A stretch of 64,000 nucleotides of DNA from assembly GCF_039654945.1 (NCBI RefSeq), contig NW_027361684.1, forward strand, positions 39,556,001-39,620,000, read 5' to 3'. Below the pieces are notes generated by a model. That model did not search any database. It saw only the letters and a program-made list of their open reading frames with translations, and was not told where the DNA came from. Below, one piece after another: positions 1-38,296 of this stretch (the first letter of the stretch is position 1; each line of letters starts with the position of its first letter). The translations under genes and the position numbers were made by a program. The DNA is from Dendrobates tinctorius (taxonomy: Eukaryota).

Positions 1-3000
1 GACCCTCGGAAGCAAGGGAAGAGAGGAAAGATGTACGGGAGCCGGAACCGGTGCCACGACAGAACTAGGGCATCCGCACCGATGGCGCGTGGATCGCGTG
101 ATTGGGCGATGGTTTGAAGAACCTTGTTGTTTAATCTCGAAGCCATGAGATCCACATCAGGAGTCCCCGAACGATGGCAAATCTGCTGAAAACCTCCGGA
201 TGAAGAGACCACTCTCCCGCGGCCAGGCCCTGGTGGCTGTGAAAATCCGCTGCCCAATTTTCTACGCCCGGGATGTGGACTGCCGAGATGGGCGAATGAC
301 TGGTTTCGGCCCAATGGAGGATGTGACTCACTTCATGCATGGCCATCCTGCTTTGAGTTCCCCCCTGGCGGTTGATATACGCCACAGCCGTGGCGTTGTC
401 GGATTGGATCCTGATGGAGTGGCCTGCAAGGAGATGGTGAAAACTCCGTAGGGCTAATCTGATCGCTCGAATGTCTAGGATGTTGGTGGGGAGACGAGAC
501 TCTCGAGGAGACCACCGATCCTGTGCCGTGTGGTGACGAAAAACCGCACCCCAGCCCAGAAGACTTGCGTCGGTGGTTACTACCAACCAACCATTCTCTT
601 GATTCAGGGAGGATTTCAGAGTCCACCACTTGAGGGCTTGTCTGACCCGCAGAGACAGGAGGAACCGACGGTCCAGAGAGAAAGGGGTTCTTGTCCCAGG
701 CTAACAGACTCACATGTTGCAAGGGACGGAGATGGAACTGGGTGAACGGGACAGCCTCCATCGCTGCTACCATCTGTCTGAGAATTCTCATGGTGAAAGG
801 TGAAACGAATGGAGAGAGAAACTGGTTGAAAGAGACCGCGCTGCTTATTGTAAGGCTCGGGTCTTCTCTGAAGGGAGAATGACCAACCCGCGGGAAGTAT
901 CAAAGATCATTCCCAAAAAGGAAAAAACTGTTGAGCCGGCTTTGGGAAGGACGCTTCGAAGTTTATTTTCCAGCCCAGGCGAGAAAGTGCATTAACTGTT
1001 ATATTTACGGATTCCTCGCATGCTGGAAAGGACGGACTCTTGATGAGCAGGACGTCCAGATATGGTAACACTACCACTCCCCGAGAGTGACGAATGGCCG
1101 TGACAGCCGCCATGACCTGGCAAAGACCCTGGGGGCGGTGGCGAGTCCGAAGGGCAAGGCAATGAACTGGAAGTGTTCCTCGTGAATTGCAAAACGTAGG
1201 AACTGCTGGTGGGACAGGCAGATTGGAATGTGAAGGTAAGCGTCCTTGATGTCGATGGATGCTAGGAACTCTCCTTTTTTCCAAGGAAGTGACAGCTGAT
1301 CGGAGAGATTCCATTCGGAACTGCCGTACCTTGACCAACTGATATAACAGTTTGAGGTCAAGTATGAGCCGCATCGCCCCGTCCCTCTTTGGAACCACAA
1401 AAAGGTTTGAATAAAAACCTCTGAACCGTTCGTCCTGAGGGACTGGAATGACAACTCCGTCCTTTTGCAGCGCCTGAACAGCCCGAAGGAAGGCTGTTGT
1501 CTTCTTTTTGGGGAGGGAGGATGGGAAGAAACGTGTTGACGGAGGAGAGATTTCTATCTTGTATCCGGAGGACACCAGTTCCCTTACCCAAATGTCGTGG
1601 ACGACTGCGAGCCAGGTGTGACTAAATGAAAGGAGATGATCTCGTACTCTGCCGTCGTCCGCCGGATACCGCAACAAGTCATTGCGTAGAAGATTTGTGG
1701 GATCGGGGTCCTCGAGAACCGGATGCCCTGGGTCTGGGCTTCCAAGAGCGATTAGGTCTGTAAGAGACCTGGGTGCCTCCGTCTCCGCACGGGGGCCGAC
1801 TAGAGTTGGCCGGGAAGGTAGAGGAAGACCAACCAGAGTTATTGCGAAAAGAAATTGTGTCGGCTGTTGGTTCCGAAACGGCCGAACAGCCTTTTGCTGA
1901 GGAGGGAAACTACTTCTTTTTTTTTTTCTCCCCCCCCCCCCTCCCGGTAAAATCAGAGGTGAGCTGGTCCAGCTTCTCCCAAAGAGGCGACCAGACTGAT
2001 AAGGTAGAGAAGTTAGCGATGTTTTAGACATGGCGTTCGCTCGCCAGTCACGGAGCCAAAGAGCTCTTCTAATGGAGATTGCATTAGCGGCAATTTGAGC
2101 AGCACCATTGGCGGCATCAAAACAGGCATCAACTACAAAATCTCCTGCGTGAACTATCAGTCTGGCGACGTTGGTAGATCCCAGAGGGAGATTGCTACCC
2201 TAAAGAGCAGTGATTAAGACCTCTGTCCAAGCGGCCATAGCCTTAGTGACCCAAATCGCTGCAAACGATGGAAAAAGCACCGCTCCTGAAGCTTCAAAAA
2301 CTGAGCCGGCGAGAATCAGGTTTGACGATCGGAGAGGTTTCTGATCAAGGAACCTTCCGAAACGGATAGGAGCGTCTTAGAAGCCAGCCTTGATACAGGA
2401 GGGTCCACAGATGGGGACTGCAACCAATCTTTCGTTAGATCTGGGTGAAAAGGGTATTTAGCCTGAATAGACTTATGCCCTGTGAATCTCTTATGTGGTC
2501 TATCCCTATGTCTCTGGACAATGTCCTTAAAATCAGGGTGGCTGGTAAATAATTTGCGTACACACTTGGTCCTCATAAACGAAAATGCGTGTGCTGGAGG
2601 AGGAGTATTTTCCTCCTTCAACTCCAGAATCCTGTTGACGGATACTATAAGTGAATCAAGCGACTCTTGGTAAGTTGGAGGATTGGGGAGCTGAAGCGTC
2701 AGATTCCAATTCAGAGTTGTACTCGCTGTCACCCTTAAAAGAGGGAGAGCGAGAAACAGAACTCGCTGGTGCTGAAGCACAAGCATGACTGGGGGACGCC
2801 CCAATGGGTCCGCTCTCTCGCTTGACTGTCCCTTGAACAAGTACGGCCCCTGCTGGTGGACGGTTCCCAGCGAAGACGCCCTCCAACTTAAAGAGGCTTC
2901 CCAGAGAGAGTCTATAGCCTGTAGTCTGTGACTCCACCGACCGTGACAGGGACGCAGCCCACTCAGGGGGACAAAACGCAGGAAGACTCGCAGCAGCGCC

Positions 3001-3813
3001 GGCGGCGGTGAGAGGCGTTTGGGCGCAGGCCGCGTCGCAGTAGATTTGCAAATGGTACACACGGCATAGAACATAGTGCTTCTTAGAAGCCTACTTAGTT
3101 TCCTTGGATTACGACATAGCGCTCCGGAAAGGGTTAACGGGAAAGTCTGACTGCAGCAGCAGAGAATGTGCAGAGAAAGGGTTAAGCATTAGTCTGAAGG
3201 CAGATGCAGCTTACCCGGTCCTGTACTGCATCCTCCGGGAGGAATAGCTGTTGTAGTGTCACCCGGTATCCGCCTGAAAGGTCACCTCACAGCTCTGAGG
3301 TAAAAGGAGATGGCCCCCGAGATTACAATTGCGCGTCTCGCCAGTAAAGAGAGGCGCCAAGAGGAGGGGGCGGTGATAATAGCGCGGGCAGCGCTATGCA
3401 AACTGCAGCCTAGTAGGCCTGAAAAGCCGGGGGCTCAATTTCAGGCATACACGCGGTAGGCGCCGGGGCAGGGCGGCGCTAGTGGGCGGCGCTATGGAAA
3501 TTGCGGCCTAGCAGGCCAGAAAAAGCCGGGGACTAAATTTCTCGTAGAAAGGAACCGTCGCCCCCTTCACTCCGTTAATTAAAAAGTAAAAATTTACAGA
3601 AAAATTCAAAAATAAAATAAAACTGATGGGGTCTGAAACCAGACCCAAGTGCCTCCTACAGACACTAAGCAAGAACTGATGAGATCTCGTCCAGCGAGAG
3701 GGTGTATGCTGCAGGGGAGGAGTTAACTTTTTCTAGTTTACTTAGTGTCCTCCTAGTGGCAGGAAAGCATAACACCCACGGTCTCTGTGTCCCCCAATAA
3801 GGCGTAGGAGAAA
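1..3813 (-). mobile_element. DIRS1-like tyrosine-recombinase retrotransposon, 5' part, decayed (LTR, gag, RT, RNase H, start of methyltransferase-like domain); continues off window
   Basis: ORF fragments give RT (FLASIDIKDAYLHIPI, LPFGLATAPRVF, VLPYLDV from YLDD), RNase H (VTTDASLLGWG, IQSDNATAVAYINRQGG) and gag CxxC (VCTIC). Minus strand begins tttctcctacgccttattggggga at 3813, a typical DIRS terminus. Multiple frameshifts. Confidence 0.9.
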
Positions 3814-4204
3814 TATAATAGCATATCAGTTTTGCTCACAAACTAAAACTTTTAAACTAGCTCTATAGTGAACCATGCTATCGGGTCACTGATAACGTGA
3901 TTGAACTTCCATGATTGAAGAAATGGGAACGCCAGATATGGCATACCATGAGTAAGGCATAGGTTTCCTTTTTGCCCGTTTTGACTCTCTTTAGTACCAC
4001 GATCTTTACTATACTATACCACTATAGGAAAAAGAAAAATATTTTAATTCAGTTTTCCCAGCTGGATTTTCTGAACTACCTGTATGACCATTATTTTCTT
4101 CTTCCCAGATAAAAACTTTAAGGTTGTGTTAACCCATGTGTGACTCCAACGAGTAGGGCTGTGGAGTCAGTAAGCCAAACCTCAAACTCCTCTATTTCCC
4201 TGAC

Positions 4205-4992: not shown

Positions 4993-5329
4993 CTGCAGGA
5001 AGGAGAGAGTTCAAAGAGGATAAGTTATATTTCTACACTTTGTGCTTGTATCCTCTATAACATTCCAAGAAAATCTCTTCTACAAACTCTGCATTGTGCC
5101 ATTCCGCTGTTTATCCTCATAGAAATGTATGAATAAATTGACGTATGGTTAGTGGGATTGTTCTTGCACAGCCTGATATATACATATATTAGGTATTGCA
5201 CACTTGACCTATTTGGATAGGTGCCCATTTGCAGACAAATTTAACAGAGCAAAAACCATTACCTCCTATGTACATTCATTTTTAAAATTCATGCTCAATT
5301 TTAACAGAATGCACAGAATATTTCCTTAC

Positions 5330-7001
5330 CTGAGCATGGCCATTTTATTCAGGCCTTCTGTGCTGATCATATCTCTGGAAAGAAGGTTACTGAGCTGGAG
5401 CTCTTGGTTATCTGCCATCCTCAATAGACGGTTCAGCTCCTGCTGCTGCATCGTCCTCACTTGTTGCTCGATTTCCTCACACATTACTGGACTTCCAGAG
5501 TACGACCCAGCACCATATTGTGCAGACTGAGCTGGATAGCCGGGATAAAACCCACCAGGATACATGCCACTGCCAGGATTTAAAGAATAAGGCATAGAGT
5601 ATCCAGCGTATGTATATGGTGGACGGGCAAAGTAATATGGGTTATCAGAATTCTGGAATTTGTAGTAAGATGCCTGAGGGACAGACGGGATGCCATCACT
5701 TTGTGATGTAGGTGTAGACTCATCATCGGTATCTAGAAAATGAAGTTGCGGGCTTTGGTTTTTTAGAGCAGGCTTTTGCTCAGGGTTATTGGGATCCCAT
5801 AGACGCCGATTAGCTCCACCACGGCCCCTGCCACGACCAGATTTGTTGCAAGTGGTAGTAAGGAGCTTTGTACTGTTTGGCTCTAAAGCTCCAGTAGCAC
5901 TGGATATATCAGTGTTGGCTGGAAGAATAAGGATCCCTCTCCCCCTGCCCCTGGGCTCACTCGATCGTGCTCTAAATTCCTGCTTCTCTATGGAATTGTT
6001 GCGCTTGCTATTGAGTCTATCGCTTCGTTTCCGGGTCCTCTGTTCATCAGAGACCGGCTGATAGGGGGATTCTTGGTTGTAAAACCCTTCACGGTTATCT
6101 TTGCTGCTTGATCGCTTGATGAGGTCTGTATTTTCTGAGCAGCTTTTGTCACTGGAGCTCTGTCTCTTCTTCCACTGATTTCTGCTGTCATCCCTCCGAT
6201 CATTATAATCCTCTTCAAAAGAATCTGTTGAAGACAGCGAGACCTGTTTTTTTGTGCGCACCTTTTCTTTGCGATCTCCAGTAAGCTTTCCTTTGTCTTG
6301 ACACCTCCTGTTGCCCTCAGCCAGGACGGCTTCTTCACTGCTGTTGTTGCTTCCCGCAGAACTGGTGCTACAGTTTCTAGTGCGGGTTCTCCGTTTGTCT
6401 GAGTGGGAATAACGTTTGGTTGGTCCAGGCTTTCTCTCTTCCTTACCAGGCCTCAGCGAGGCTGTGTCCTCTCCATCCTTGGTGGGTCTTTCTCGTTCTG
6501 ATCTCTTAGACTTCTCAACCTTGACAATCTTGTTTCCATTTTCCAGAGGAATCTTATGATTTGTAGCAGACAGATGATCTTCATGTTCCAGTTTTAGATG
6601 TTCAGTTTTTTTCACAATATCAGCTTCTACAATTTCGCTCAATGACTCCTTCCCAGAAACATGCAATCTCCTTCCTGGTTGGTAAATTTGTCGGTCTGGT
6701 TTCTTGGTTCTTTTTACAATTTTTCGCTCCTCACTTTCAGGGTTTACAGCGAATGAGTCACCATGATCCAGATCATCATCTTGGATTGGATCTCCAGATA
6801 ATACTGGGATAGCCCCATTAACCAAAGGTACACAATCTTTAACTTTCTCATTGTGATATTCTTCAATGTGATTGCCTCCATTGCCAGATGTATCCAATTT
6901 TGGCTTATTTCTTAGTCTTGACAGCCCGGGTTTATATATCTCAATGTCTGGGCGCCGATTATCTTTTCTCTGTCTCGGTTCCTTCATCTCCTTAACGGTT
7001 T
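5330..7001 (-). CDS. smg6: SMG6 coding exon 2 (1672 nt, disordered N-terminus with two EJC-binding motifs)
   Basis: ORF 5326-6987; RRPDIEIYKPG and KKPDRQIYQPG motifs, RGRGRG, RRLWDPNNP; ttttaag|AAACC acceptor and CAG|gtaagg donor. Confidence 0.95.
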
Positions 7002-7618: not shown

Positions 7619-8068
7619 AGGGTATATCCAAGACTGACTGAAAAAAATGTACTTAAGCAATAACAGGCAGGTAAGTTGCTACATACCTGTTGTGCACAAC
7701 GCCATTCTTCCCCGGCAGAGAGTGGTCAGAGACTGCTCCTGCCTGCGATTCGGCTGACTTCATGTCGACAAAGCAGTGGAGTCTTTTCCACTGGGTTCTG
7801 TAACAGAGCAGGACTTCCGACACTGATTGACAGCTGGATTCCCACTGACTAGCTGCCCTGCCCCATTAAAAGAGTGGAGTGGAAAAGAATGCACAGCTCT
7901 GTCGACGTGATGTCAGCAGAGGCAGCTGCATCCCCGGTAGCAGCGGTCTGTGATGGCTCTGTGTCAGAGAAGTATGGCCCTATGCACAACAGGCAGGTAA
8001 GTACCAACTTCCTGACTGTAAGTGCTTAGGCACATATTTGTTTTTCCATCAAGTCCCGGATATATCCT
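7619..8068. mobile_element. T2/Kolobok-type MITE (TTAA target, AGGG termini)
   Basis: ttaa|agggtatatcc...ggatatatcct|tta with imperfect inverted arms. Confidence 0.6.
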
Positions 8069-8904
8069 TTAGGCCATGTCTGCATTTTTGATCCACTCCT
8101 GGTTTTGGCTTACAAATATAAATGTAAAATAGTGACCAAATACTAAACATGTGAACATGGCTTTAAGAGGTTGAAAATTTTGATGGGAGTGCTTCATTAA
8201 AAACAATCATACGTACCCCTATCCCTTTATCTATAATGATGTCTGTTTAGAATCCATGAGGGCTTCTGCCAAATGCTGGACAATTTAAATGAAACCAAAC
8301 AGCTCCCATTATAGTCCAGTCATATTAATTTCCATGACCATCCTTGGATCTTACCTATAAAATATAGGATGTCAGGGATGAATATATATCCATCCCTTGT
8401 ACTGTGTAAATGGTCCATAAATCAGAAATGATTACATATCTAACTTTGAAAAAAGCACTCTCTTTTGAGCCTCACCCCTAAAGTGCATCAGTATTTTTAC
8501 ATTTGACGGTAATTTGGGGTGAAATGGGGAGGGGGGGGGTACTTTAGGGTTCCCTTTACCTTAGTCTCTGACTCATTCGTTTACTTGGGTGCTGAGGGCT
8601 CAGGCTTGGTCACTCCAGTGTTGGATTCTGTATAGTGCCTCTGTTCACTTTCAGTATAGGGAGATTTATTGCAGCAGACTGAACTTTTCTTGCAGATTTG
8701 GTGATGATGGAGCCAATGACCAGGCACGGACAGTGCAACCCTGAAAGTTTAGACTCCTGCAATACCCCTCAGTGTTCCTCAGCAGAGCAGACGCTGACAC
8801 AATACAGGACCCGGCTCTGGGTCACTTATTAGGAGGTGACCAGCATCCGGCCACCTCACCACACAGAGAGCTGAAGCTCACACTCACTGATCTCTCCTTT
8901 CTGC

Positions 8905-11900
8905 TGCTTTCCAGGATAGTTTGTCTATCTGGACCTGGTCCATAGGCTCAAATGGTAGAATAAAACCTTTCAGCACTATATTCAAATACCAAGTTGGAAT
9001 TATATTGAATTTCCTTGGACGGATTTTGGAGGCAGCTGACAGGAACCTCCTTATCCACGGGTGGTCTGCCAGGTTCTGATCAAAGTAGCAGCTCAGAGCC
9101 GACACCTGGACTTTTAAGGGAAAGTGGGTTTTAGTCCTTTTGATAAGCCAACCTGTAGAAAGTCTAGTATTTTAGCCATGTCAGGGTGGAAAGGATAGAT
9201 GGGAGTGGATCTATACCATACCGAGAAAGTCTTCCATATTTTGGAGTAGGTGGCATTTGTGACCGGTTTCCTACTTTTTTGCAAAGTGGATATGTGAAAA
9301 ATGGGACCTTGATGTAGAAGGTCTTGGTCTAGCGGCAGGGTCAGAGGTTCTTCTGAGCTCAGGAGTTTCAGAGCCCCGAACCAGTTCCTCTTTGGCCAGA
9401 GAGGGGCGATCAGGATGGTTTTGACCCTATCTGTTCTGACCTTTTGCAGAGTCCTTGGCAACAGCGGAATTGGAGGGAATGCATAGGCCAACCTGAAACT
9501 GCACGTGTGAGAGAAGGCATCCACCTTTGATTGGGTTTCCTTTGGACCTACGGAGAAATAGTGCTCTAGTTTTGCGTTTTCCCGGTTCGCAAACAGGTCC
9601 ACCTCTGGGAAACCCCATTTTATGGTTATTAACAGGAATACTCTCGTACTGAGGCTCCATTCCCCTGGGTCTAAATCCGTCCTGATCAGAAAGTCTGCTT
9701 CGATGTTGTTGGATCCTTTTACGTGAGGAGCCGATAAAGACAGGAGGGGACGTTCTGCCCAAATGAAAATTCTTGCTGAGACCTGCTGCAGAAATTTGTG
9801 CTGCCCTGATGACGTAGATGGACCACAGTGGTCATGTTGTCGGAGTAAACTCGGACATGTGATCCCTGGAGTAATGGTTTTGCTGCTCTCAGGGCCTCCT
9901 CTACCGCTCTCAATTCTCTCAAATTGGAGGATCGGCTGTCCATCTTTTTAGGGCCAGATTCCCTGAAAGACTTCTTGAGATGTCATCGCTCCCCAACCGC
10001 ATTTGTTGGCGTCTGTTGTTACTGAAGACACTGGACATTGGATGCAAGGTATTCCCTCTGCCAGATTTTCTCAGCTGAGCCACCAGTTGAGAGGTAGTTT
10101 TACGTGTTGAGGAAGATTCTAGTACCGAGTGCTTCTGCAGTTTTATCCCAGTGAGAGGTTACATTTTTGGAGGATCCTCGAGTGAGCCTGGGCCCAGGGA
10201 AATCCCTAAATACATGATGTCATTGATCCCAGGACTGACATTGCAAATCTTAAAGTCACCCTCTTCTGGGTTTTTAGGGTCCGAACCCTTGATCTTATGC
10301 TTTAGTGTTTTTGTGACAGGAAGAAAGGATCTTTGGTTTTGGGAGTCTAAGAGGATTTATAAAAAAGATCTTCTCGGTTGATGAGTTTGGGTCTGATTTT
10401 CCCCGATTTATGATCCAGCCTAAAGATGTTAGGGTATGTAGAACTGAATGGAGATGTTTTCTTAGAGTTACACTGGAAGGAGCCATGATGAGAAGGTCGT
10501 CCAGGTAGGGAACGATGCAGATGTCTTGTTTCCTCAAAAAGGCTACTACCTCCGCCATGATTTTTGTTAATGTTCGGGGGGTAGATGATGTGCCGAAGGG
10601 AAGGACCTTGAACTGGAAGTAACACACCTCTTGGCCTAGAGTGACTGCAAACCTCAGATACCGATGGTAGCTTGGAAGAATGGGTACATGCTTGTATGCA
10701 GCCACCATAGACCTGGAGGAGATGGAGAAGCCCTTTTCGATCAACGGGATTGTAGATTTTACCGACTCCACTTTAAATCGTCGATACACGATGTACTTAT
10801 TCAGCTGTTTCAGGTTGATAACCCGGTAATCTCCACTTTGCTTCTTTATAAGGAACACCCGGGAGTAATGACCTTGGCCTTGATCTGCTTCCAGTACTGG
10901 TGATATTACTGCAGAGGATAGCATTTGCTGGAGTTCTGTGTACAGAGTATTGTGTAGCCTTGATGATGGAAGAGATGTCACTTTTAGTCTTTGTGGGGGA
11001 AAGGAGGAAAATTCTATTTTCACTCCTCTTCTGCCTGAGTCCAGGATTTTGCAGTCTGATGTTACTTCCCAGCATTTTGAGAAGTAGTTTGAAATCCTAC
11101 TCGTTTGACGTCATTTCCTATCTGAACGTGGGTTTTGAAAAATATTGCTTCCTTTACCCACTATCGGGTAGCTCCACCGCCCAATTTTACGTTTCACTCT
11201 GTATTGAGGGGTCTGCGTCTGAGGTTGACGAAATGGCCTCTTTGAGGGTTTTTGGCTCAGGAAGATTTTTCTTTTTGTCGGTCACCTTCTCCAATAACTC
11301 GTCCAGTGCAGGACCAAACACGTATTCTCCTTTGAAGAAAATAGAGCATAATTTAGACTTGGATAGGATGTCTCTGCTCCACATCTTTAACCATAGTGCT
11401 CTTCTGGTGGTGTTGGAGAGTACCGAAATCCTCTGCAGCAATGCGAACTGACTCAGCCGAGGAGTCTGCAAGGAAACCAGCAGCTTTTTGTAGGAGAGCT
11501 AATGAGGCCAGGTGGTCTTCTCTGGGGGTACCGCCCCTAATATGGTCTTCCAGTTGTTGCAACCAGAGAAATAGAGTTCTCGTGATGCAGGTGAATGCGA
11601 CATTTGTCTTTAAGGAGGTCGCCAAGACTTCCTCAATAAGCTGGCCATCTTGCGGTCAAGTGGATCTTTAAGCTGAGAGGAGTCCTCAAAGGGTAACAGT
11701 TTTCTTGGCTAACCTAGCCACCTGGATATCCCCTTTGGGGATTTCAGTCCAGCACTTTGAGACGTCTTCATTTTTACTTGGGAAACGATCCTTCATATCA
11801 ATTGGGACATTGTTTCCTTTTGGGGAATTCCTATTCATCTAGGATTAAATTTTGAATGTTGTCATGGATGGGAAAACACATCTTCCTTCTTGATTTCAGA

Positions 11901-13108
11901 CCACCAAACATCTCATCTTGGACTGTGTGGGATGGTTTCTCCTCTTCAACTCCCACCGTATTCATGACTGCCAGCAGTAGTTCCTCCATATCCTCAGAGG
12001 AAAAGAATATTTTTTTATTTTCCTCCGTATGACTGAGTAAGTTCACCTTCTTCCAACCATTCTTCACTGCCTCATATTTCAGCTTTTGAGTCATAGCTAT
12101 CCTCAGGGGTGTGTTTCTTTTTTTTGGGTACAGAGGGGCCCCCTGAAAAGGACTGGGAGAAGGTAGCTAGAGACGACTGGATCTCCTGTCGCACCATCCA
12201 TCCCACTTCATCCATCAGGCATGGCTATTCTTCCCAGACAATTTTTCTCCATGCATAGCTGACAAAGCTTTTTTTATGGCCATATGGAAGTTTTTTTTAC
12301 TGCAGATGGCGCATTTGCGATTTGCAGTTTTTTCCCTTGATTTTGGTGCAGGATCCTTTTCTCCCTAGAAGAGACGAGAAGGGAAATTTCCATGAGGATG
12401 GACCAAAGGAGTCCTACCCTTACCAGGTATACTCACTGGGCCAGGGTCAGCGCTGGGCTCTGCAGACACAGATCTAAGAGAAGCAGCAACCATCATTAGA
12501 ACCTCAGTCCTACCTTATGGAGTCTTCAGTCAGGGTCCTTTTATAAGGGAACGAAGACCCAGCACTTCTTATCATTCAACAGGATGAGATCTCTCCCACT
12601 CTGTGATAGGCCCTGTCTTCTGTTGCCTTTCCCAGTTTGAAAATTTCCCGACAAAATGGCGGTGCGTTCCACCATGGAACGCAGGGCAGAAGTCATGTTG
12701 CGTCTTCTCTCTCGGGGGTGTATGTCACTTCCTATGCATACCCAGCACTGCACCGCCAGCATGCAGGCGCGAGGGGGAGAGAAGCTACAAGGCTGTGGGG
12801 CTGCGGGAGACCCCAGCTACTCCTCACCATCCAGCATGCGCTGGAGGATGGTGCGGTCCTACCCGGAGCAGCTGCGGGAGGAAGGTCCAGGACGACTGAT
12901 CCAGGCTGCTCGGCTTAAAGGTATTTAAAAGAGTGTCGCCGGCGCAACTCTCAGGAACGCACACAAAAAACCTCTTCATCCCTTAGGGACAGGAAAACAC
13001 GGATGATAGAGGGAAGGGGAGGGCTATTTAAACCTCTTGTTTTCTTTCCCTAATTAGGATAGGGAAGCATCCTTCTGTGTGTTGTCGTGGAGGAAATTAG
13101 AGAAAAAA
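8905..13108 (-). mobile_element. DIRS1-like retrotransposon, decayed, truncated within the recombinase
   Basis: RT (IVPYLDDLLI), RNase H (SNLRELRAV, VYSDNMTTV), methyltransferase-like (DLFA..N.K..YFS, DAF, YAFPPIPLL), recombinase start (SALSCYF, HPWIRRFL, PTW), gag, LTR-like end near 13105. Confidence 0.9.
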
Positions 13109-26016: not shown

Positions 26017-27802
26017 GTGAGAGTGTAGTTTTGCTATCATCTGATTCATCGTGTGTGTATATAGCAATACACCCACAGGTGACATAAGTAATGAATTCAG
26101 GGACTGACATCTGATAACTTTATGCTCAGATTTACTATTGTTTGTTAGGTTTCTTTCACACTGCGTTCAGGCACCCGTTCATTGGCCTTGTTGGGGCTTA
26201 CATCTGCAGACGTATTCGCCGATGGGGGCATAGACTATAATGGTGTAGATAGAGCGAACGTGCGCTCTGCTGTGCATCATGTTCGGGCGTGTACTCATAC
26301 TGGAGGCGGACACTCGGATGTAGTCAAATGCATTGAGGTGTCCACATCCAGTAGGCGCATATGTCAGAAAATGATGCACGGCAGAGCACACTTTCGCCCT
26401 GCCGGCACCATCGCAGTCTATAGCTCCGTCAGTGCATATGTCCGAATCCCATTTTGTGGGCCGTAAGCGCTGACAGGGCTACCAAATGGGTGGCTGAACG
26501 CAATATGAATGCACCCCTACAAATACCTTTTCAGACGGAGGCTTGTGGGAATGATTGGCAAAGATGGTGCCAAATGAGAAACCTGACGTGTCCTACACAC
26601 GTGACTTGCAGATTTGGTGCAGAAAATATTCTGCAGCATGTAAATTCTCCCTGCGTTTTTGCTCTGCATTTTTTAACATTGACTTCACTCAAATCAGTCA
26701 AAACAACGGGGCAAAAACGTGCCTTTTTGCAGCTGCATTTTTCCTGCCAAGAACTGCAGAAATTTCTGCATCCATTTACTCAGTTTGTACACCTATCCTA
26801 AAAATGAAATCCAGATACCTTACTGTCTTGAAAGTACTTGACAGACATAGGGGTGAAAATGGCAAGCATTACAGAGATAGAGACCAGCACACTACGACTT
26901 TATGAACATCTCCCAGGAGGGAATACAGATTAGTGCAGCACGCTAGTACTGCAAAGGCTACTGAAGCCACCACAAGAGGGGGCCTTGTAGCATAGGGACG
27001 TGTATTGTTTCAGTTGGCTGTAATGGAGGCTGATGATATGTGCACTTGTAAGGTTCAGCCAGGACCGTAGTCGTGGCCGAGGACTCCGGGGCAACGGAGT
27101 CCTTGCCTCCACTCACCTAGATATAAGTTTTCTGTCAGCATACAGTACCTGTCGCTTTCTGTTATGCGCTGCACATTCTCCTCAGATGATGTGGAACAAA
27201 CAGTCACAGTCCTGTTCAATACTTGAACAATCAACTTTACTGTTTCCTTTACACAGCGCATACATATTCACTCCAGCATTAGCATCAGGGTTGGCAATGG
27301 ACATTTTCTCCTCTGTCCCTGTCTTTCCCTCTCTCCCACTAAGCTCGCTTCCAGGACGGACCGTGCTCTCCGGTCTTTCAGCATCAACTCTGCTCAGTCT
27401 TACTCCAGTAGGGGACCCTTAACCATTTAGCTCCGGTCTCAAGAATATCCACAGATGAAATAAGCTGCCACATTCTGAGTGACCTGCCCGTACTGCTTAG
27501 TCTTTTTCTGGCAACTGCAGACCCACTAATTCTTCACTGTCAGCACTTCTCCTGGTGTTACTCCCCAATGAGATACTGGCCCGAATTCTGTGTGACTGGG
27601 CTCTTGAATTTAACGTTATGGAGCCAACAGCCCTGTCAGGGCGCTCCCACCCAACTGATTCAAATTCCAGATGTTCCCTGGCTTAACAGCTGTTAGCCCC
27701 TCCTACTTTAACTATTTACAAGCTGAGAACCTCTAACCCCATCAGTGGGCAACTGGGGTAATACTTTCACTATCTATATAACGGTGTCCAGTGTTAAATA
27801 CA

Positions 27803-29283
27803 TTTCTCTATCGCTTCATTGGGGGACACAGGAAACCATGGGGTGTATGCTGCTGCCACTAGGAGGCTGACACTATGCAGAAAAAGTTAGCTCCTCCTCC
27901 GCAGTGTACACCCTACCGACAGGAAGTAGGATGTTCCAAAAATTTTTCTTGCATGGAGACATGGGTTTTCGCCTATCGTTCCTATCTAAGGTTTCATTTG
28001 GCTTTCGGTTTCACGAGCGAAATTATCCCCAAAGTAGTCCCTCACCAACTTTCCGTTCTTTCCATGTGGCTCCAATAGGCCAAATCATTGAGGTCACTGG
28101 AAGGACAAGCGCTCTCCTTCCTCAGGCTAAACCTCGTCATTATTCAGCGCTTTTTTCCTTTGGGGATCTAGGTTTGAGTCCATACTTGTTTTTCTCAGGA
28201 ACAAATTTTCTTCGTTCAGCATTTGCCTCCTGTGAATCGCATGATTTTCCCTTGTTCCATGAAGCTCTTATCCAGGTCCTGATTTCTTCAGGACTTTGGC
28301 GATATCTGCCTTTGCAACAGACGGGTTCCTTTTCCTTCCAGTTGGTAGCCTGTCCTGTCAGACTCTCAACCACCCTTGGGGTCTCACAGAGCCTGTTGCA
28401 CCCATGGTGCACTTCTGTGGATCAAGGGTCCACTCTCCATCATTCTAAATTCCCTTTCTTTCGTCTGCCTCGAAATTTTACTTCGTGACGCTCTCGCATC
28501 AGGCTACCTTGCCACCGCAACGGTACTTATCAAGCTCCGGCTTGAAGTGTACAGGTCCTCTGGCCTCCAGGTCAGCGTCTGCTCGCGGAATCTGGTCGGC
28601 ATTAGTAGGGTTGCCGGCTCAGAAAGGACTGCGTTCTTTTGAGTATGATGCACTCTGCCCGGGCAGTGTGTGTCCTCCTGGCGGTACTCTTTGGGCCTTC
28701 GTCTGGCACCTCTGCAGTGCGATGATATGTCCTCCACAGGTCCATGAGGTTTTCTTCAGAGCCCATGCCTAGCTTCGGCAAGTGCCGGTCGGGGTAAAAG
28801 ACCTCGCAAGTGACCTTGCAGGTGACGAGGGTGACTTCCTCGTCCTGATTGGAGTTGTTTGCTGTTCCCTCCCCTTGGGGACTGCTTTGGGACGTCCCAT
28901 GGTTTCCTGTGTCCCCCAATGAAGCGATAGAGAAAACAGGATTTTTAGTTGCTTACCGTAAAATCTGTTTCTCTGAGCCTTCATTGGGGGACACAGCACC
29001 CTCCCAAGTTGAACAGCTCGGTTACTGCATAATATTGTTACAGTGTGGATTTGTGTTTTCTGTGTTTTTATCTCGTCCACAGTTTTACTTCTACTGCTTT
29101 CTCACTAACTGAGCATCCTACTTTCTATCGGTGGGGTGTACACTGCGGAGGAGGAGCTAACTTTTTTTTTTTCTGCATAATGTCAGCCTCCTAGTGGCAG
29201 CAGCATACACCCCATGGTTTCCTGTGTCCCCCAATGAAGGCTCAGAGAAACAGATTTTACGGTAAGCAACTAAAAATCCTGTT
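27803..29283 (+). mobile_element. Non-autonomous mini-DIRS (inverted LTRs, ICR, decayed recombinase remnant)
   Basis: Left LTR tttctctatcgcttcattggggg...; inverted right LTR ~29112-29250 plus extension; ICR ~28897-28997 complementary to both termini. Confidence 0.88.
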
Positions 29284-30028
29284 ATAACGTAGAAGGGAAA
29301 GGGTACATAACATCCTGCATCAAATTATTTATATATATAAATATATATATATTTATGTACACTTACGGACACTCCTTTGTGTCCCTTACACAGTAATTGA
29401 GGTCCCTCTAATGACCGCTACAGGCAGACCGCATATCTCACAATGTTTTTGCTGCCCCATCTGAGAGCAGGATAAAGAAGGGGCATAGATCTAAATTCCA
29501 GTACGGGGTCACTTACTGGGCTTCTTGCTGTAGTTTAGATAAGATTCTGTTCTATTATTATTTAGAACTCTTCTAGTCCTGTTGATGTAGTCTCTAATTT
29601 TTATGAGCTCCCACTATACTCCACCATTGATCGGCAGATTTTTGCCTATGCACAGTGCAGGTAGAAAGTTGTCAAATAGTGAGATGGGGCTAGTGAGAGC
29701 TCTTCTTTGAGAGGACTGGCAGATAAAGGTGATTTTTGTCAAAACTACAGCAAGAAGCCCAGTAAGTTACCCAGCGTCCATGTCTGTTTGTCCCTATTTT
29801 AGGCTGTTTTCAGATTATGCCAACAGGTTTATGCTTCCCATTCAATGAAAGCATTTGGTATTTAATGGTTGTGTATAGAGTAGCGAGGGATTTCCCTGCA
29901 AAGTACGTTTCTCGTGCATCCGTGCAGGGTGGCAACGTATATGACATGGCCATCATTAGCCAGGACATATCTCAGCCTGGATCGCAGTTACAGCTGCATT
30001 CATAACCTTAATTCCAGTCTCCTTTCAA

Positions 30029-32140: not shown

Positions 32141-32489
32141 AATAAGTTTATTAGAAAGGAAACATATTATACCTATGGACATCAGGAAATAAAAATTTTA
32201 AGTAGCAAATTACATTATTTTACTGGCTGTCCCATAGCAGCATAGTCTGGGAATTGAGAAGTAAATAAGAATTGAAAGCGCTGCAATTTTCAGCACTATT
32301 TTGCCAAAGGATGAGTTCCTAGTCTGTAATATTTGATAAATGTTTATGGAGTTGTCCATGTGGCAGCTCTGCAGAGCTATTCCAGAGAAATATATAGTTG
32401 GATTCTGCCCAGGATATTGACACATGTAGAATGAGCTCTAATATGAAAAGGAGGTTCGAGACCTTTCATGTTATAACAATAGATAATGA

Positions 32490-35400
32490 TGTTTTATGAC
32501 CACCTGGAAAGGATAGCAACAAGAGAGCTGCTAATTCTGAGAGCCATCTGATGGAAGTAATCGCAACCAAACAGGCCAGCCGTCCAGGAGAGAAGGGAAG
32601 ACACAATGTCCTGAATGGATTTACAGGGGGATCTCTGAAGGATTCTAAAAAAGGTCCCATGGGTCCACAGGGGGACAATAAGTTGGCGCTAGGCGAGCAA
32701 CTCCTTTGAAGGAAGGTCTTTTACCTGGGGACAAGAGGCCAAATTAGGTTGAAACATAAATGAGAGTGCAGAGACCTGACCTTTGTGTGTACTAAGAGAC
32801 AAATTCTATCCCTGATTGTAAGAACGCCAGGATAGAAGGAAGGGAAAAAGAAACGGGAGCCATGTGGCTTCTTCCACACCAGCGAAAGAAAGACTTCCAG
32901 GTCCGTTGATAAATGCTTGAGGACGAGGGTTTCTTTTCTCTAATCATGGTCTGTATGCCCTGGGACGAGAAGCCTCCCCCTTCAGGACTGCACCTTTAAC
33001 GGCCATGCCATTAAATTGACAGAGTGAGAATTCTGGTTGAATAGGGGACCCTGAGAGAGTCTGAGAGTTTCCAGGGTACATCTGTGAGTCGGTTGACTAA
33101 CTCTGCATACCAGGTGTCACAATTCCTCCGCTCAGTGAATGATTGCTATCGAAACTGTCTTGCTGAGCTGTCTGTGTCTTGATTGACAGCTTGGTTGTCC
33201 AATACTGTGATGGGCTTTCTGGGCTGATGGTACCTTGATTGACAGCTTTGCTGTCCAATCTGTGTCTTGGGTGTGTGGGACTTTCTGCAGGTGTTCAGTG
33301 TTCTGTTATTCGCATAGCTACTTAACTGAGCTGTGTGCCCCTGATACCTGCCAGACGTAGTTTGTGCTTCTCGGTGACTGTTAACCTGATTCTGTTGCTC
33401 TGAGTTCTGATCTTTTGCTGCCTGACCCTTTGGACAGTGTTCTGACTATCCATTTGTCTTGTCCTTTGGCTTTTGATCTGCTATCTCTTGTTATTTACTG
33501 TGACCTGACTTACTCCTTCGTCTTTTCCCTTGGTTATCTACGTACTCTCTCGGTATTGACCCCGGAATGTCTGACTCTTGTGCCTCACAGCCTGTCCGTG
33601 AGTAGTGTCTAGTATCACACCAGGCTCTTTTGGGCCAGTCTGGAGCCATTAGGATGACTGGAACGCCTTCCGTCTTGATCTTCTTGGCAAGTCTGGGGAT
33701 CGGGAAGAGAGGTGGAAAAAGGTACAGAAATTGAAATTGAGACCATGGAATGACCAGAGCATAAGGTGATCGTAAGCTCTGGCCAGGAAAGAGGGACCTT
33801 GTGATTCATCCGAGACACCATTGGATCGACTTCTGGAGTGCCCCATCTCTGACAGATCTGATCTAACACCGCTTGCCCGAGAAGAGGTCCTGATGATTTA
33901 GGAAGTTGGCAGTTCGGTTGTCCACGCCTGGAATGTTCACCGCTGATATTGCTGACACGTGCTGCTCTGCCCATGCCAGAATCCGTGAGACCTCTTAAAT
34001 GATTGACTAGCTGAGTATCCCGCCCTGGTGGTTTGTGTGCCACAGCCATGGTATTGTCGGATTGAATGCGAACTGGTCAGCTCGCTAGAAGGTCCTGCCA
34101 GTTGAGAAGAGACGGGTAGTTGGCCCTGATCTCCAGAAGGTTGATGGGAAGAGAGGTTGAAGTATGGAGAGATCTAGGGAAGGGATCATTTTGTCCTAGG
34201 ATGACAGGAGGGCCAGTTGGAGGGGATGGGCTTGAAACTGTGCAAAAAGGACTTCTTCCATCATGGCAATTATCTTCTCGTCTTCCCTGGAAGATGAGCT
34301 GACCACCTAAAGAATCTTGATCCTTGGAAGGGGAGATTGGTAAGGGACTTTTTGGAGGCCGGGTCCGCATTCCAGGTCTTGAGCCAGAGCATTCTGCGTA
34401 TGGCTACAATATTGCTAATAACACGGGCTAAACAGCTGGCGACATCAAGAAATGTGGTGAGCAAATATTTACTTGTATGGGCAATCTGATCAGCCAGTTC
34501 ATCAAGTGAGACCTCTGATACGATGCCCTGACGAAGGAGTTTTGCCCAGGCGAAAGCGAAGTCGGGACAGAGAGTCACCAGAAGCAAAGGCGGAATTGGC
34601 TAGGGCCTCTGTCTGTCCGTCAGTGGAATTTCTCTCTCTCAGGGACTGACAGGATTGTTTTTGCGGACAAGGCGGGTCAACTTCCGAGGATTCTGCCCAT
34701 TTGCTGATGAGGCCAAAGCCAAAAGGATATAGGACATTTAAATGCTTTCTACCTGAGAAGTGCTTTTCCAGGTGCTCCCTGTGTTTTGTAAAAATTCCCT
34801 AAAATTCCTTGTGTTTTTAAAACCCCTGGGGAGGGCATTTTGACTTTTTTAATGAGACTAAGTGATCTGAGGAAGGACAGGCCCTCCTTCTCAATATTAA
34901 TGGTCTGATTTGACGGCAGATATGAGACAATCATCCATATCGTAGAGTTTGGAAGTTTGGTCCATGTCAAGCTCAGATTCTGACTGGGAATCAAGGTCTG
35001 ACTTCAAGGGAATCCTGCAAGATGGGGAAGGATAAGAGGAACCAGATGAGGAAGTGGAATGCGCCCGCTTCGTAGACGTTAATCCTTGATCTTCCATGCT
35101 GAGGGTAATGGGTGGCGCCTGCGACTTGTTCTGAGAAACTATCAGTGCACTGGTGGGTGTTGAAAGGTTAGGTAAAATAGTAACAGCCCACTTTGGGGGA
35201 GGGGGTCCCAGGCGGCAGGGGGCTTGTGTTAGGCTTGCATGGTAGAAGGGTTGCAATTTGGGGAGAAAGCAGAGGCCTGACCTGTAGGCCACTTCATTTT
35301 GCAGCGGGCACAGGTGTAGTGAATGACCGTTTGGGAGGGACGGGAGCAAGACTACCTAGGTCTGTGTACATGTATAGGCCTGGGGCTGAGGTGGGTTGCT

Positions 35401-35620
35401 AAGGAGGGAAGAAAAAAAAAAACAGCCTGTACAGAGCCTACCTGGTCTTGGATGCAGATAACCTCGTGTGAACGAGTCTGTTCCCCTATTGGGAAAGGGA
35501 CAGGTCCTGCAGAAAACAATTCCTTGGAGTGGAGCCGTGACTGGAGATGTAACACCGCCGGAGGTAGAGAAGGAAGGGGCGAGCCCAAACAAGGCGCTGA
35601 AAGCCCACGCTGTGGAAATT
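32490..35620 (-). mobile_element. DIRS1-like retrotransposon, heavily decayed, RT largely deleted
   Basis: Recombinase (VAITSIRWLSELAAL), methyltransferase-like (WGTPEVDPMVSRMNHKV), RNase H (PINLLEIRA), gag (AIRRMLWLKTWNADPASKKSLTNLPF). Confidence 0.8.
33115..33619. mobile_element. Solo LTR nested in DIRS
   Basis: ccagg|TGtcac...atcaCA|ccagg; perfect 5-bp TSD. Confidence 0.85.
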
Positions 35621-35649
35621 TGACTTTTAATACCATCTTTATGCTGATG

Positions 35650-36730
35650 ACACAATTATACACCTTACACCTGCTATGCTACAGAACACCAGTGAATGTC
35701 CGCAGTTTCCAACATCATGTCCGCTCTATATCTGAAACTCGACCTTTCCAAAACTGAACAACTTCTGCTCCTGCTGTCTTCTGACCTCCCTAAATGTTAT
35801 ATCTCCTTTTGTGGGTGGCACCATAATAATGCCCCGGCAGCAGGCGTGTTGTCTGGCTGTTTCGTTTGACACCAATCTTTCATTCACCTCTTGTATTCAA
35901 TCTCTTGGCCGTTCTTGTCGCTTGCACCTGAAGAACATCTCTAGAATCTGCCACTTTCTCTACATGGAAACAAAAAAAAACCTGCACTGTTGCCCTGATC
36001 CTCTCCCGCCTTGACTACTGTAATACTCTTAATTAACTCATTCAACTTTCCCCTCGCCAGTCCATCCTTAATGCAGCAGCCAGGGTCATGTATTTGGCTA
36101 ATCGTTACTCAGATGCCTCCGCTCTGTGTCAGTCATTGCACTGGCTGCCCATACATTACAAGGTCCAATTTAAATTCCTTGTTCTCACCTACAAAGCTCT
36201 TCACTGTACGGCACCCCCTACATCTCCTCTCTTATTCCTGTTAATCAGCCTACCTGTTCTCTACACTCCGCAAGGGAATTTCGACTAACATCCACACTAA
36301 TCCCACTCCCAGGTCTAAGCTTCTCCCGAGTTGCACCAATTCTTTTGAATGCTCTACCCCAACAAAATTAGGACTAACCACAACTTAGTTTTAAAATGTT
36401 CTCTAAAAACACATCTGTTTAGGACTGCCTATCAAGCTCCCTAGTCAGTCTTTTTTTATATACAGCCCATTCACTATTTCTCTGAACATAATTTTCCATC
36501 AAACTCCACCACACCCAAAAGAACTACTATCCCCCATTACCTTAAGATGGCTGGACCATCATTGTAAATAAGCACCAGTACTTTTTCTCCTCCACCGCAT
36601 TTTAGATTACCAGCAGGGTCATTATTTTTGCTTTAGTTATTGTATTAACTTTAACTGTTACTTATGACTGTTGTATATGAATCTCTGAATTCTAAAGCCC
36701 TGCGGAATATGATAGCACTATATAAATATT
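35650..36730 (+). mobile_element. L2/CR1-clade LINE 3' fragment
   Basis: SALCQSLHWLPIHYKVQFK; tail ctgcggaatatgatagcactatataaat. Confidence 0.7.

Positions 36731-38258: not shown

Positions 38259-38296
<38 letters not shown>

What the first reader, a model, noticed from the sequence alone, without database searches (positions are those of the whole stretch)
12365..12496. Spliceosomal intron inside DIRS gag: splicing needed to translate Gag
Seen on the - strand: ATG at 12496, 20 codons (MMVAASLRSVSAEPSADPGP), then CCA|gtgagt...ttcccttctcgtctcttctag|GGA. This 72-nt phase-0 intron (12365-12436) is followed by GEKDPAPKSREKTANRKCAIC, the gag CxxC. Unspliced, the acceptor TAG is an in-frame stop. 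Retroelements normally lose introns, so retention implies unspliced RNA is the replication template while spliced RNA makes Gag. I recall introns being reported in some tyrosine-recombinase retrotransposons, so novelty needs checking.
Basis: partly seen in the sequence, partly recalled or inferred. Interest (0 to 1): 0.7.

Follow-up and report, generated by a model that had tools for sequence, protein, structure and literature searches.

The report
Conserved intron in frog DIRS gag
A decayed jumping gene (DIRS retrotransposon) in this frog genome keeps the relic of a short intron at the start of its capsid-like gene; the same intron is present in DIRS elements across frogs, so in many lineages the protein can start only from spliced RNA while the copied RNA must stay unspliced.

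Summary
On the minus strand: ATG 12496, 20 codons, GTGAGT at 12436, a 72-nt stretch ending in a 16/17 pyrimidine tract plus TAG at 12365, then GEKDPAPKSREKTANRKCAIC.

It is not chance. Only two such donor/acceptor pairs occur in the 128 kb of both strands, and the other one also precedes a DIRS gag CxxC.

I compared 14 DIRS 5' regions: five in this window, the rest from Bombina, Xenopus, Spea, Rana, Aquarana, Engystomops, two Ranitomeya species and Dendrobates. All have a 50-135 nt GT..YAG interval just upstream of the gag CxxC.
- Five RefSeq models, one GenBank model and one chimeric model use exactly these sites.
- Two Ranitomeya species share the exon boundary, but their introns are 85 and 80 nt and look very different.
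- In 7 of 9 lineages with the ATG in exon 1, unspliced RNA has no in-frame AUG before the CxxC.

Caveats:
- This copy is a frameshifted fossil.
- Its closest relative has an open 81-nt intron.
- In five lineages the ATG lies just after the acceptor, so the intron is 5'-UTR.
- No RNA reads covered the site.

I found no description in open DIRS literature. The scan reached the same conclusion earlier on another piece of this genome (s1-376925).

The parts
12539..12545 (-). TATAAAA box 49 nt upstream of the exon-1 ATG; possible promoter of the gag mRNA (inferred)
   Evidence: Read directly. No ATG lies between it and 12496. Similar TATA-like boxes sit upstream of exon 1 in Aquarana, Spea and Engystomops (TATTTAA).
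12437..12496 (-). Exon 1 coding part: ATGATG plus 18 codons (MMVAASLRSVSAEPSADPGP), ending in phase 0
   Evidence: The 3' half is homologous to R. imitator L002, with an identical 17-nt core and the same frame (AEPSA).
12365..12436 (-). 72-nt intron relic: GTGAGT donor, candidate branch ctcAt, 16/17 pyrimidine tract, TAG acceptor that is an in-frame stop when unspliced
   Evidence: Equivalent introns occur in 13 other DIRS 5' regions.
12299..12364 (-). Start of exon 2: basic stretch GEKDPAPKSREKTANRK plus the gag CxxC (TGC 12313-12311, TGC 12304-12302)
   Evidence: It aligns to KRKCATC of L002 and RKCNMC of Engystomops P0009.
11114..12298 (-). Rest of gag, broken by several frameshifts and stops (the first at the A-run 12298-12291); includes the LAP2alpha-like core at 11190-11498
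   Evidence: Segment map. Pfam LAP2alpha E=1.4e-3. phmmer gave 232 hits, the named ones being frog DIRS Gag / 'LAP2-like' proteins. tblastn covers up to 12296.
10295..11023 (-). Reverse transcriptase ORF (242 aa)
   Evidence: Pfam RVT_1 E=4.7e-15.
8905..9947 (-). RNase H, methyltransferase-like region and the start of the tyrosine-recombinase region, all decayed
   Evidence: RT_RNaseH E=0.004. Dam E=0.11. tblastn to DIRS polyproteins reaches down to 8905. No Pfam integrase hit.
7680..7999 (-). Inverted-repeat pair (7680-7792 / 7878-7999) near the 3' end; candidate ICR / right terminal repeat
   Evidence: the repeat finder pairs I1/I2, 73-84% complementary. No matching left repeat was found upstream of 12500.

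Best explanation
Window 12365-12436 (minus strand) is the relic of a genuine spliceosomal intron. It is an ancestral, selectively maintained part of frog DIRS1-like retrotransposons. It lies between a short first exon and the exon that opens with the basic stretch and CxxC motif of Gag.

In this lineage, and in most neobatrachian lineages examined, the initiator ATG lies in exon 1 and the intron carries an in-frame stop; here that stop is the acceptor TAG itself. The proposed mechanism follows. Spliced RNA is the mRNA for Gag, and presumably for the downstream Pol and recombinase products that depend on gag translation. RNA that escapes splicing cannot start Gag and is the form that is reverse-transcribed, which is why every new copy still carries the intron. 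No intronless copy turned up among the 14 regions examined. This suggests that spliced RNA is either not used as a template or gives dead copies, for example because a cis-acting signal spans the intron. That last step is inference.

What is shown: the sequence anatomy, conservation of position and signals across 14 regions, divergence and non-3n length change of the interior, use of the sites by independent gene models, and absence of an alternative AUG in 7 of 9 lineages. What is inferred: actual splicing in vivo, the division of labour between the two RNAs, and any packaging or promoter role. This particular copy is an inactive, frameshifted fossil.
For: 1. Exact anatomy and rarity.
2. The closest relative, L002 (R. 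imitator), shares exon 1 (identical 17-nt core, same frame), a phase-0 GTAAGT donor, an unconserved 81-nt interior and a CAG|GGA acceptor. An annotators' model (CAJ0963854) uses this acceptor.
3. RefSeq models splice at the equivalent place: Engystomops XP_072002898 (84 nt), R. imitator XP_069613252 (85 nt), R. variabilis LOC143783279 (80 nt), D. tinctorius XP_073399842 (135 nt) and Rana temporaria XP_040207078 (81 nt). The GenBank protein KAG8535432 carries the same spliced N-terminus as the Engystomops model.
4. R. imitator and R. variabilis have the same codon boundary (after residue 56) and are 78% identical over the first 110 residues. Their introns differ in length by 5 nt and look very different when read side by side (not formally aligned).
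5. In the table of 14 regions, 12 of 14 introns have lower GC than their flanks and 12 of 14 have at least 13/17 pyrimidines. Lengths are 50-135 nt, and all lie 6-61 codons upstream of the CxxC.
6. In 7 of 9 exon-1-ATG lineages there is no in-frame AUG before the CxxC without splicing. In 5 of 9 the acceptor TAG is the in-frame stop.
7. The Engystomops element is complete (110-bp ITRs plus ICR) and present as two 99.76%-identical copies on different chromosomes. The intron is therefore carried by a recently active element.
Against: - There is no direct RNA evidence. No RNA run holding the stretch was listed, and contigs of three probable RNA runs left 12225-12421 uncovered.
- Gnomon models can be partly ab initio; their RNA support could not be inspected.
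- L002's intron is 81 nt and free of stops, so intron retention would still give a Gag there.
- In Aquarana an in-frame ATG inside the intron is what RefSeq chose as the start.
- In five lineages the ATG follows the acceptor, so splicing cannot be needed for the reading frame there.
- The D. tinctorius isoform-X2 model uses a weak GTACCC donor and a poor tract (5/17).
- Several lineages have suboptimal exon-side donor positions.
- All relatives examined are frogs. Nothing is known here about other animals.
Confidence: 0.8

Rival explanations
1. The intron is real, but its main role is not to gate the Gag reading frame. It would be a 5'-leader intron kept because splicing boosts export and translation, marks the transcript as 'gene-like' against silencing of intronless retroelements, or overlaps an internal promoter as in Penelope. 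On this view, the ATG in exon 1 of some lineages is a secondary drift of the start codon.
For: - In Xenopus laevis, Spea, Bombina, window copy E and family D (L001) the ATG lies 0-10 nt after the acceptor, so the intron is purely 5'-UTR. These include the early-branching frog hosts.
- TATA-like boxes and an ETS-like palindrome lie just upstream of exon 1. In Engystomops no ATG lies between the TATTTAA and the gag ATG.
- Penelope has a 75-bp 5'-UTR intron overlapping its internal promoter (PMC8557442).
- That HUSH silences intronless mobile elements is my recollection of published work, not checked here.
Against: - In 7 of 9 exon-1-ATG lineages the frame is closed without splicing, and the acceptor TAG is repeatedly the in-frame stop. 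That looks like more than drift.
- This rival is compatible with the best explanation rather than exclusive of it.
Confidence: 0.12
2. The GT..AG interval is not spliced. It would be a variable coding or leader segment that gene predictors bridge with an artificial intron to rescue an ORF. Gag would start at a non-AUG codon, an internal AUG or an intronic AUG.
For: - There are no junction reads.
- L002's interval is open in frame.
- The Aquarana RefSeq model starts at an intronic ATG with no intron.
- One model uses weak sites (L005).
Against: - Canonical signals recur at the same place in lineages with no detectable DNA similarity, including lineages where the interval lies upstream of the ATG and no ORF needs rescuing.
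- Length changes are not multiples of three (85 vs 80 nt) although the flanking codons are conserved.
- In-frame stops occur in 8 of 9 lineages.
- Such pairs are rare in background sequence.
Confidence: 0.06
3. A chance GT..AG pair in the decayed 5' flank of this one copy, unrelated to the element's biology.
For: The copy is heavily decayed and no left terminal repeat could be found upstream of it.
Against: - Exon 1 and both splice sites are homologous in another species' copy.
- The other DIRS 5' regions in the same window show the arrangement in three cases and an out-of-frame 42-nt trace in the fourth, copy C.
- The background rate is about 2% per target.
Confidence: 0.02

Closest known systems
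DIRS1-like tyrosine-recombinase retrotransposons of Xenopus and other vertebrates (Repbase DIRS-n_XT/XL families; Gazolla et al. 2022, PMC9210276; Piednoel et al. 2011, PMC3266345)
   Same: Gag with a LAP2alpha-like domain, followed by RT/RNase H/methyltransferase-like regions and then the recombinase. The intact Engystomops relative has inverted terminal repeats plus an internal complementary region.
   Different: These descriptions treat ORF1 as one uninterrupted ORF. The words 'intron' and 'splic' do not occur in PMC9210276, and 'intron' does not occur in PMC3266345, PMC2685390 or PMC4157794. Here a short intron precedes or interrupts the 5' end of gag in every frog lineage examined.
Penelope-like elements (Penelope of Drosophila virilis; Chlamys-3_cRei)
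   Same: A retroelement that keeps a short spliceosomal intron in its 5' region through retrotransposition. The Penelope intron is 75 bp and lies in the 5' UTR (PMC8557442).
   Different: PLEs use target-primed reverse transcription with a GIY-YIG nuclease, and their intron overlaps an internal promoter in the pLTR. DIRS elements replicate through a free cDNA and a tyrosine recombinase. Here the intron often splits the gag coding frame. PMC8557442 calls PLEs 'highly unusual among retroelements' for retaining introns, so the DIRS case is not general knowledge.
Splicing-regulated expression in retroviruses and LTR retrotransposons (retroviral major splice donor; copia and BARE1 gag RNAs; Ogre intron).
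   Same: One primary transcript is divided into spliced and unspliced pools with different fates. The unspliced form is the replication template, so the intron persists in progeny.
   Different: In retroviruses the unspliced RNA is the Gag mRNA and splicing gives env or accessory mRNAs. In copia and BARE, splicing removes pol to raise the Gag ratio. Here the polarity is reversed: the spliced RNA would be the only Gag mRNA, and the unspliced RNA cannot start Gag.

Membership tests
DIRS1-like retrotransposon (order DIRS) | Reverse transcriptase / RNase H of the DIRS type | tested here: met
   RVT_1 E=4.7e-15 at 10295-11023. RT_RNaseH E=0.004 at 9719-9943. tblastn matches to frog DIRS polyproteins span 8905-12296.
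DIRS1-like retrotransposon (order DIRS) | Gag-like ORF1 with a LAP2alpha-like domain | tested here: met
   Pfam LAP2alpha E=1.4e-3. The segment 11190-11498 gave 232 phmmer hits, best 5e-19; the named ones are frog 'LAP2-like' or uncharacterized Gag proteins carrying PF11560.
DIRS1-like retrotransposon (order DIRS) | Tyrosine recombinase ORF instead of a DDE integrase | tested here: inconclusive
   No Pfam integrase hit in segments 8435-9150. Only the N-terminal part is recognisable through tblastn to DIRS polyproteins. The region is decayed.
DIRS1-like retrotransposon (order DIRS) | Inverted terminal repeats plus an internal complementary region | tested here: inconclusive
   Copy A has a 3' inverted-repeat pair at 7680-7999, but no left repeat was found. 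The intact Engystomops relative has 110-bp ITRs and an ICR complementary to both ends.
Spliceosomal (U2-type GT-AG) intron | GT donor, branch site, pyrimidine tract and YAG acceptor at a length the vertebrate spliceosome accepts | tested here: met
   cca|GTGAGT, ctcAt about 29 nt upstream of the acceptor, 16/17 pyrimidines, TAG|G, 72 nt.
Spliceosomal (U2-type GT-AG) intron | Position and signals conserved while the interior diverges and changes length freely | tested here: met
   14 regions compared. Copy A vs L002. R. imitator vs R. variabilis: 85 vs 80 nt at the same codon boundary.
Spliceosomal (U2-type GT-AG) intron | Removal from RNA in vivo (junction reads or cDNA) | tested here: inconclusive
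   No RNA holder was listed. Contigs of runs X1-X3 do not cover 12225-12421. Two protein searches for N-terminal fragments from transcript assemblies found one further RefSeq model and no transcript-derived protein. The only support is gene models whose RNA evidence could not be inspected.
Intron-retaining retroelement of the Penelope kind | PLE reverse transcriptase with GIY-YIG endonuclease and pLTRs | tested here: not met
   The RT is followed by RNase H, methyltransferase-like and recombinase-like regions. The relatives are DIRS elements with ITR/ICR. The resemblance is functional only.

The most novel reading that the evidence does not exclude
Frog DIRS elements use an obligatory splice switch of reversed retroviral polarity. 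Only spliced RNA can be translated into Gag (and hence Pol and recombinase). Unspliced RNA is closed to Gag initiation by an in-frame stop, often the acceptor TAG itself, and is reserved as the reverse-transcription template. A cis signal spanning the intron would keep intronless progeny from propagating. The arrangement would have been maintained across crown Anura. It might also shield the element from host surveillance of intronless retroelements.
Probability: 0.4. Interest if true: 0.75.

Novelty: new variant of a known kind. Interest (0 to 1): 0.6.

Why it matters
Retroelements are expected to lose introns, because their template is processed RNA. Penelope-like elements are cited as the unusual exception (PMC8557442). 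A conserved intron at the head of gag in a second, mechanistically unrelated retroelement order has three consequences.
1. It gives a simple, testable way for DIRS elements to separate translated from replicated RNA.
2. It corrects how DIRS ORF1 is annotated. ORF-based TE libraries would truncate Gag or give it the wrong start, and genome pipelines already emit these loci as spliced 'uncharacterized' or 'LAP2-like' genes.
3. It offers a natural system for asking why an intron is kept by a retroelement: packaging, promoter, export, or escape from silencing of intronless DNA.

The acceptor can also capture host exons, as the TMEM192-gag chimeric model in R. imitator suggests. That matters for gene annotation in frog genomes rich in DIRS.

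Tried and rejected
- **DNA similarity between the window's DIRS copies.** blastn found none; they are related only at protein level. A within-window family alignment was therefore impossible.
- **Left terminal repeat of copy A.** None found.
- **Copy D reading.** I first read it as an open spliced frame from an upstream ATG. I rejected this after the D. tinctorius relative showed no upstream ATG and a gag ATG downstream of the acceptor, in another frame. The open frame in copy D is an accident of decay.
- **Word search with copy D gag.** One hit only.
- **RNA evidence.**
  - The look-up of sequencing runs listed only three small probable-RNA runs holding almost none of the words.
  - Read laying at 80% likeness put DIRS-like contigs on conserved gag/pol pieces but none across 12225-12421. 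This gives no verdict on splicing.
- **Transcript-derived proteins spanning the exon junction.** The search with P0152 found nothing. The search with P0157 (residues 1-110) returned P0029 again and one new RefSeq model, P0190.
- **Logan contig L008 (Aquarana).** It keeps the intron, and whether that run is RNA or DNA is unknown.
- **Literature.** Seven searches and several targeted reads found no mention of an intron in DIRS elements. Goodwin & Poulter 2001, Poulter & Butler 2015 and the Volvox kangaroo paper are not held. A prior report there or in Repbase notes cannot be excluded.
- **Family consensus.** I built none and repaired no frame. The DNA alignment outputs print a majority line automatically, and I did not use it.

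Full report
**1. The observation**

- TATAAAA lies at 12545-12539.
- ATGATG starts at 12496, and 20 codons (MMVAASLRSVSAEPSADPGP) end at 12437.
- The donor is cca|GTGAGT at 12436.
- The 72-nt interval has its last 20 nt almost all pyrimidines and ends in TAG at 12365.
- The next exon reads GGA GAA AAG..., that is GEKDPAPKSREKTANRKCAIC.
- Unspliced, the frame runs into the acceptor TAG.
- No in-frame ATG lies between that TAG and the CxxC.

The pair is unlikely to be chance.
- A strict scan of both strands of the window asked for GTRAGT plus a tract of at least 16/18 pyrimidines with YAG, 50-150 nt apart. It finds only two pairs.
- The second pair, 29516-29461 on the minus strand, is followed immediately by ATG GGG CAG CAA AAA CAT TGT GAG ATA TGC (MGQQKHCEIC), another DIRS gag start.
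- With a looser acceptor rule, 210 kb of fetched loci give about one pair per 7 kb.

**2. What the surrounding element is**

The interval sits at the 5' end of a decayed DIRS1-like retrotransposon on the minus strand.
- RT: Pfam RVT_1, E=4.7e-15, at 10295-11023.
- RNase H: weak hit at 9719-9943.
- Gag: a piece at 11187-11471 hits LAP2alpha.
- Methyltransferase-like region: weak Dam hit.
- tblastn matches to frog DIRS proteins run from 8905 to 12296.
- Gag is broken repeatedly, first at the A-run 12298-12291 just after the CxxC.
- The recombinase region is not recognisable by Pfam.
- No left terminal repeat was found.

This copy is therefore a fossil, and any functional statement concerns its lineage, not this copy.

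The window holds three more diverged DIRS copies plus a 5' fragment, all on the minus strand. Copy D is at 9-3814, C at about 32.3-35.7 kb, B at about 37.6-39.9 kb and E at about 29.3-29.7 kb. They have no DNA similarity to copy A.
- B, D and E each show a GT..YAG interval just upstream of the gag CxxC or gag start.
- C shows only a 42-nt trace that is out of frame.

**3. Relatives elsewhere**

A profile-free search of 1.84 billion representatives with the gag piece 11190-11498 gave 232 hits. All those I named are frog proteins, mostly RefSeq 'uncharacterized' or 'lamina-associated polypeptide 2-like'. I fetched the loci and mapped the proteins back onto the DNA.

Annotated models that splice at the equivalent site:

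| Species and model | Exon 1 | Intron |
|---|---|---|
| Engystomops pustulosus XP_072002898 | 16 codons, MMADEADPTFLHPPVS | GTAAGT...TTTCAG, 84 nt; exon 2 starts EKDQGSK...RKCNMC |
| Ranitomeya imitator XP_069613252 | 56 codons | 85 nt |
| R. variabilis LOC143783279 | 56 codons | 80 nt |
| Dendrobates tinctorius XP_073399842 | 60 codons | 135 nt, weak sites |
| Rana temporaria XP_040207078 | 44 nt, phase 2 | 81 nt |

A GenBank protein of Engystomops, KAG8535432 from another assembly, carries the same spliced N-terminus.

The closest relative of copy A is a Ranitomeya imitator locus (L002).
- It shares an identical 17-nt core in exon 1 (CTGCAGAGCCCAGCGCT), in the same frame.
- It has a phase-0 GTAAGT donor, an 81-nt interior with little similarity, and a CAG|GGA acceptor.
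- Its chimeric annotated protein (TMEM192 exons joined to gag) enters gag at exactly that acceptor.

Where the annotated CDS is unspliced, the same signals lie in the leader.
- Xenopus laevis: GTAAGT, 87 nt, gtctttCAG, then 1 nt before the ATG.
- Spea bombifrons: aag|GTAGGA, 85 nt, TAG|ATG.
- Bombina bombina: GTACGT, 50 nt, TAG, then 10 nt before the ATG. The exon-1 end TTAAGGCACA matches Xenopus.
- D. tinctorius family D: CAG, then 7 nt before the ATG.
- Aquarana: GTGAGT, 95 nt, phase 1, with the ATG in exon 1 by my reading. RefSeq instead starts at an in-frame ATG inside the interval.

**4. Why I take it for an intron**

Across the 14 regions:
- Position relative to the CxxC is kept (6-61 codons upstream).
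- Lengths are 50-135 nt, mostly 72-95.
- 12 of 14 have at least 13/17 pyrimidines before YAG.
- 12 of 14 are lower in GC than their flanks.
- Interiors show little or no similarity between lineages: none between the window copies by blastn, little in the one cross-species alignment made, and none evident when the remaining introns are read side by side.

The two Ranitomeya species give the cleanest test. Their first 110 residues are 78% identical and the boundary falls after the same codon. The introns differ by 5 nt in length and look very different. That pattern fits non-coding sequence bounded by selected splice sites.

Where the interval lies upstream of the ATG, no gene predictor had any ORF to rescue, yet the signals are present. 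The Engystomops element is complete (110-bp ITRs plus ICR, 5344 bp). It occurs as two copies 99.76% identical on different chromosomes, so the intron belongs to a recently active element.

**5. Is splicing needed for Gag?**

Nine lineages have the ATG in exon 1.
- Eight have at least one in-frame stop between the exon-1 ATG and exon 2 when read unspliced.
- In seven, unspliced RNA offers no in-frame AUG between the last stop and the CxxC.
- In five, copy A among them, the acceptor TAG is itself the in-frame stop.

There are two exceptions. L002 has an open 81-nt interval. Aquarana has an intronic ATG.

In the five leader-type lineages the frame does not depend on splicing.

Because all genomic copies keep the interval, the reverse-transcribed RNA must be unspliced. 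This follows from retrotransposition itself.

**6. What could not be shown**

There is no RNA evidence.
- No RNA run holding the stretch was listed.
- Contigs of three probable-RNA runs of the same species label lay on conserved DIRS pieces but not on 12225-12421.
- Searches for transcript-derived N-terminal fragments found only RefSeq models.
- The RNA support behind the RefSeq models could not be inspected.
- Breadth is limited to frogs.

**7. Comparison with what is known**

Open-access DIRS literature does not mention introns.
- Neither 'intron' nor 'splic' occurs in the Xenopus DIRS survey PMC9210276.
- 'Intron' does not occur in PMC3266345, PMC2685390, PMC4157794 or PMC5941688.
- PMC8557442 calls Penelope-like elements 'highly unusual among retroelements' for retaining introns and describes Penelope's 75-bp 5'-UTR intron. 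That is the closest analogue.
- Goodwin & Poulter 2001, Poulter & Butler 2015 and Repbase notes could not be read, so an earlier mention cannot be excluded.

Retroviral and LTR-element splicing, which I cite from memory, is similar in logic but reversed in polarity.

Within this scan, note s1-376925 reached the same conclusion on another piece of this genome. I used it only as a lead and re-derived the evidence independently. Note s1-381580 flagged copy B, which I checked.

**8. Verdict**

I put the probability of a real, conserved DIRS 5' intron at about 0.8. The 'spliced RNA makes Gag, unspliced RNA is the template' model is the best-supported mechanism for this lineage but lacks RNA proof. 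It is a new variant of a known kind (intron-retaining retroelements; splice-partitioned retroelement RNA). The locus itself is a dead copy.

Noticed in passing
window 29300-29700 (minus strand); intron 29516-29461, ATG 29460: A fifth DIRS 5' fragment (copy E): cca|GTAAGT, 56 nt, ctgctctCAG|ATG GGG CAG CAA AAA CAT TGT GAG ATA TGC. The ATG follows the acceptor directly, and the gag frame stops after about 24 codons. It abuts the mini-DIRS whose terminal repeats match L001 at about 27797-27914 and 29152-29279.
   Followed up: partly
window 39700-39777 (minus strand), ATG 39864: Copy B (family of D. tinctorius XP_073399842) has an exon 1 of 29 codons, a CAG|GTGGGG donor (with GG|GTGAGT 5 nt further on), 78 nt, and ttttaTAG|GAG AGG... 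KECALC. The acceptor TAG is again an in-frame stop.
   Followed up: yes
window 3151-3214 (minus strand) and L001 5904-5997: Family D leader has GTAAGC then ctgctgCAG / cctttCAG a few nt before the gag ATG. In the window copy the second acceptor is mutated (cctttcCGg). Its apparent open spliced frame from ATG 3231 is an accident of decay. The left terminal repeat of copy D is about 3543-3814 (matches L001 4920-5186, and 12512-12652 inverted).
   Followed up: partly
window 8079-8166: This about 85-nt piece near the 3' end of copy A is hugely over-represented in the three probable-RNA runs: summed contig depth of about 450-800 in the 8088-8284 bin (table 2) and up to about 2700 at single positions, across 23-40 contigs per run, against under 10 for most of the rest of the element. 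It also occurs twice in the R. imitator locus (L002 2014-2078 and 15114-15178). It may be a separate abundant short repeat or a DIRS end/ICR module. Unexplained.
   Followed up: no
L003 3770-3791 and 3876; window 40070-40090; L007 about 2780-2815; L009: Upstream of exon 1 many lineages carry palindromes built from ETS-like (ACTTCCGG/CCGGAAGT) or CRE-like (TGACGTCA) motifs, followed by a TATA-like box. In Engystomops no ATG lies between the TATTTAA and the gag ATG, whereas five ATGs lie further upstream in the leader. This hints at an internal promoter for the gag mRNA, separate from a start in the left terminal repeat.
   Followed up: partly
L007 2830-3003 (Xenopus laevis): An exon-1 ATG (ATG GCG GCG GAT...) is in frame with the annotated gag ATG once the 87-nt leader intron is removed. 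A spliced RNA could therefore encode an N-terminally extended Gag. Possibly this is the other annotated isoform.
   Followed up: no
L002 4001-11729 (Ranitomeya imitator, CAJ0963854): The annotated protein joins TMEM192-like exons to DIRS gag at the gag intron's acceptor and runs on into RT. This is either a host-TE chimeric transcript or an annotation artefact.
   Followed up: no
window 5326-6987 (minus strand): A 553-aa open frame rich in Ser/Arg/Lys with no Pfam hit, directly downstream of copy A on the same strand. It looks like a large host exon.
   Followed up: no
window 9-3814, 7680-12545, 32311-35700, 37605-39900: All four DIRS copies in the window lie on the minus strand.
   Followed up: no
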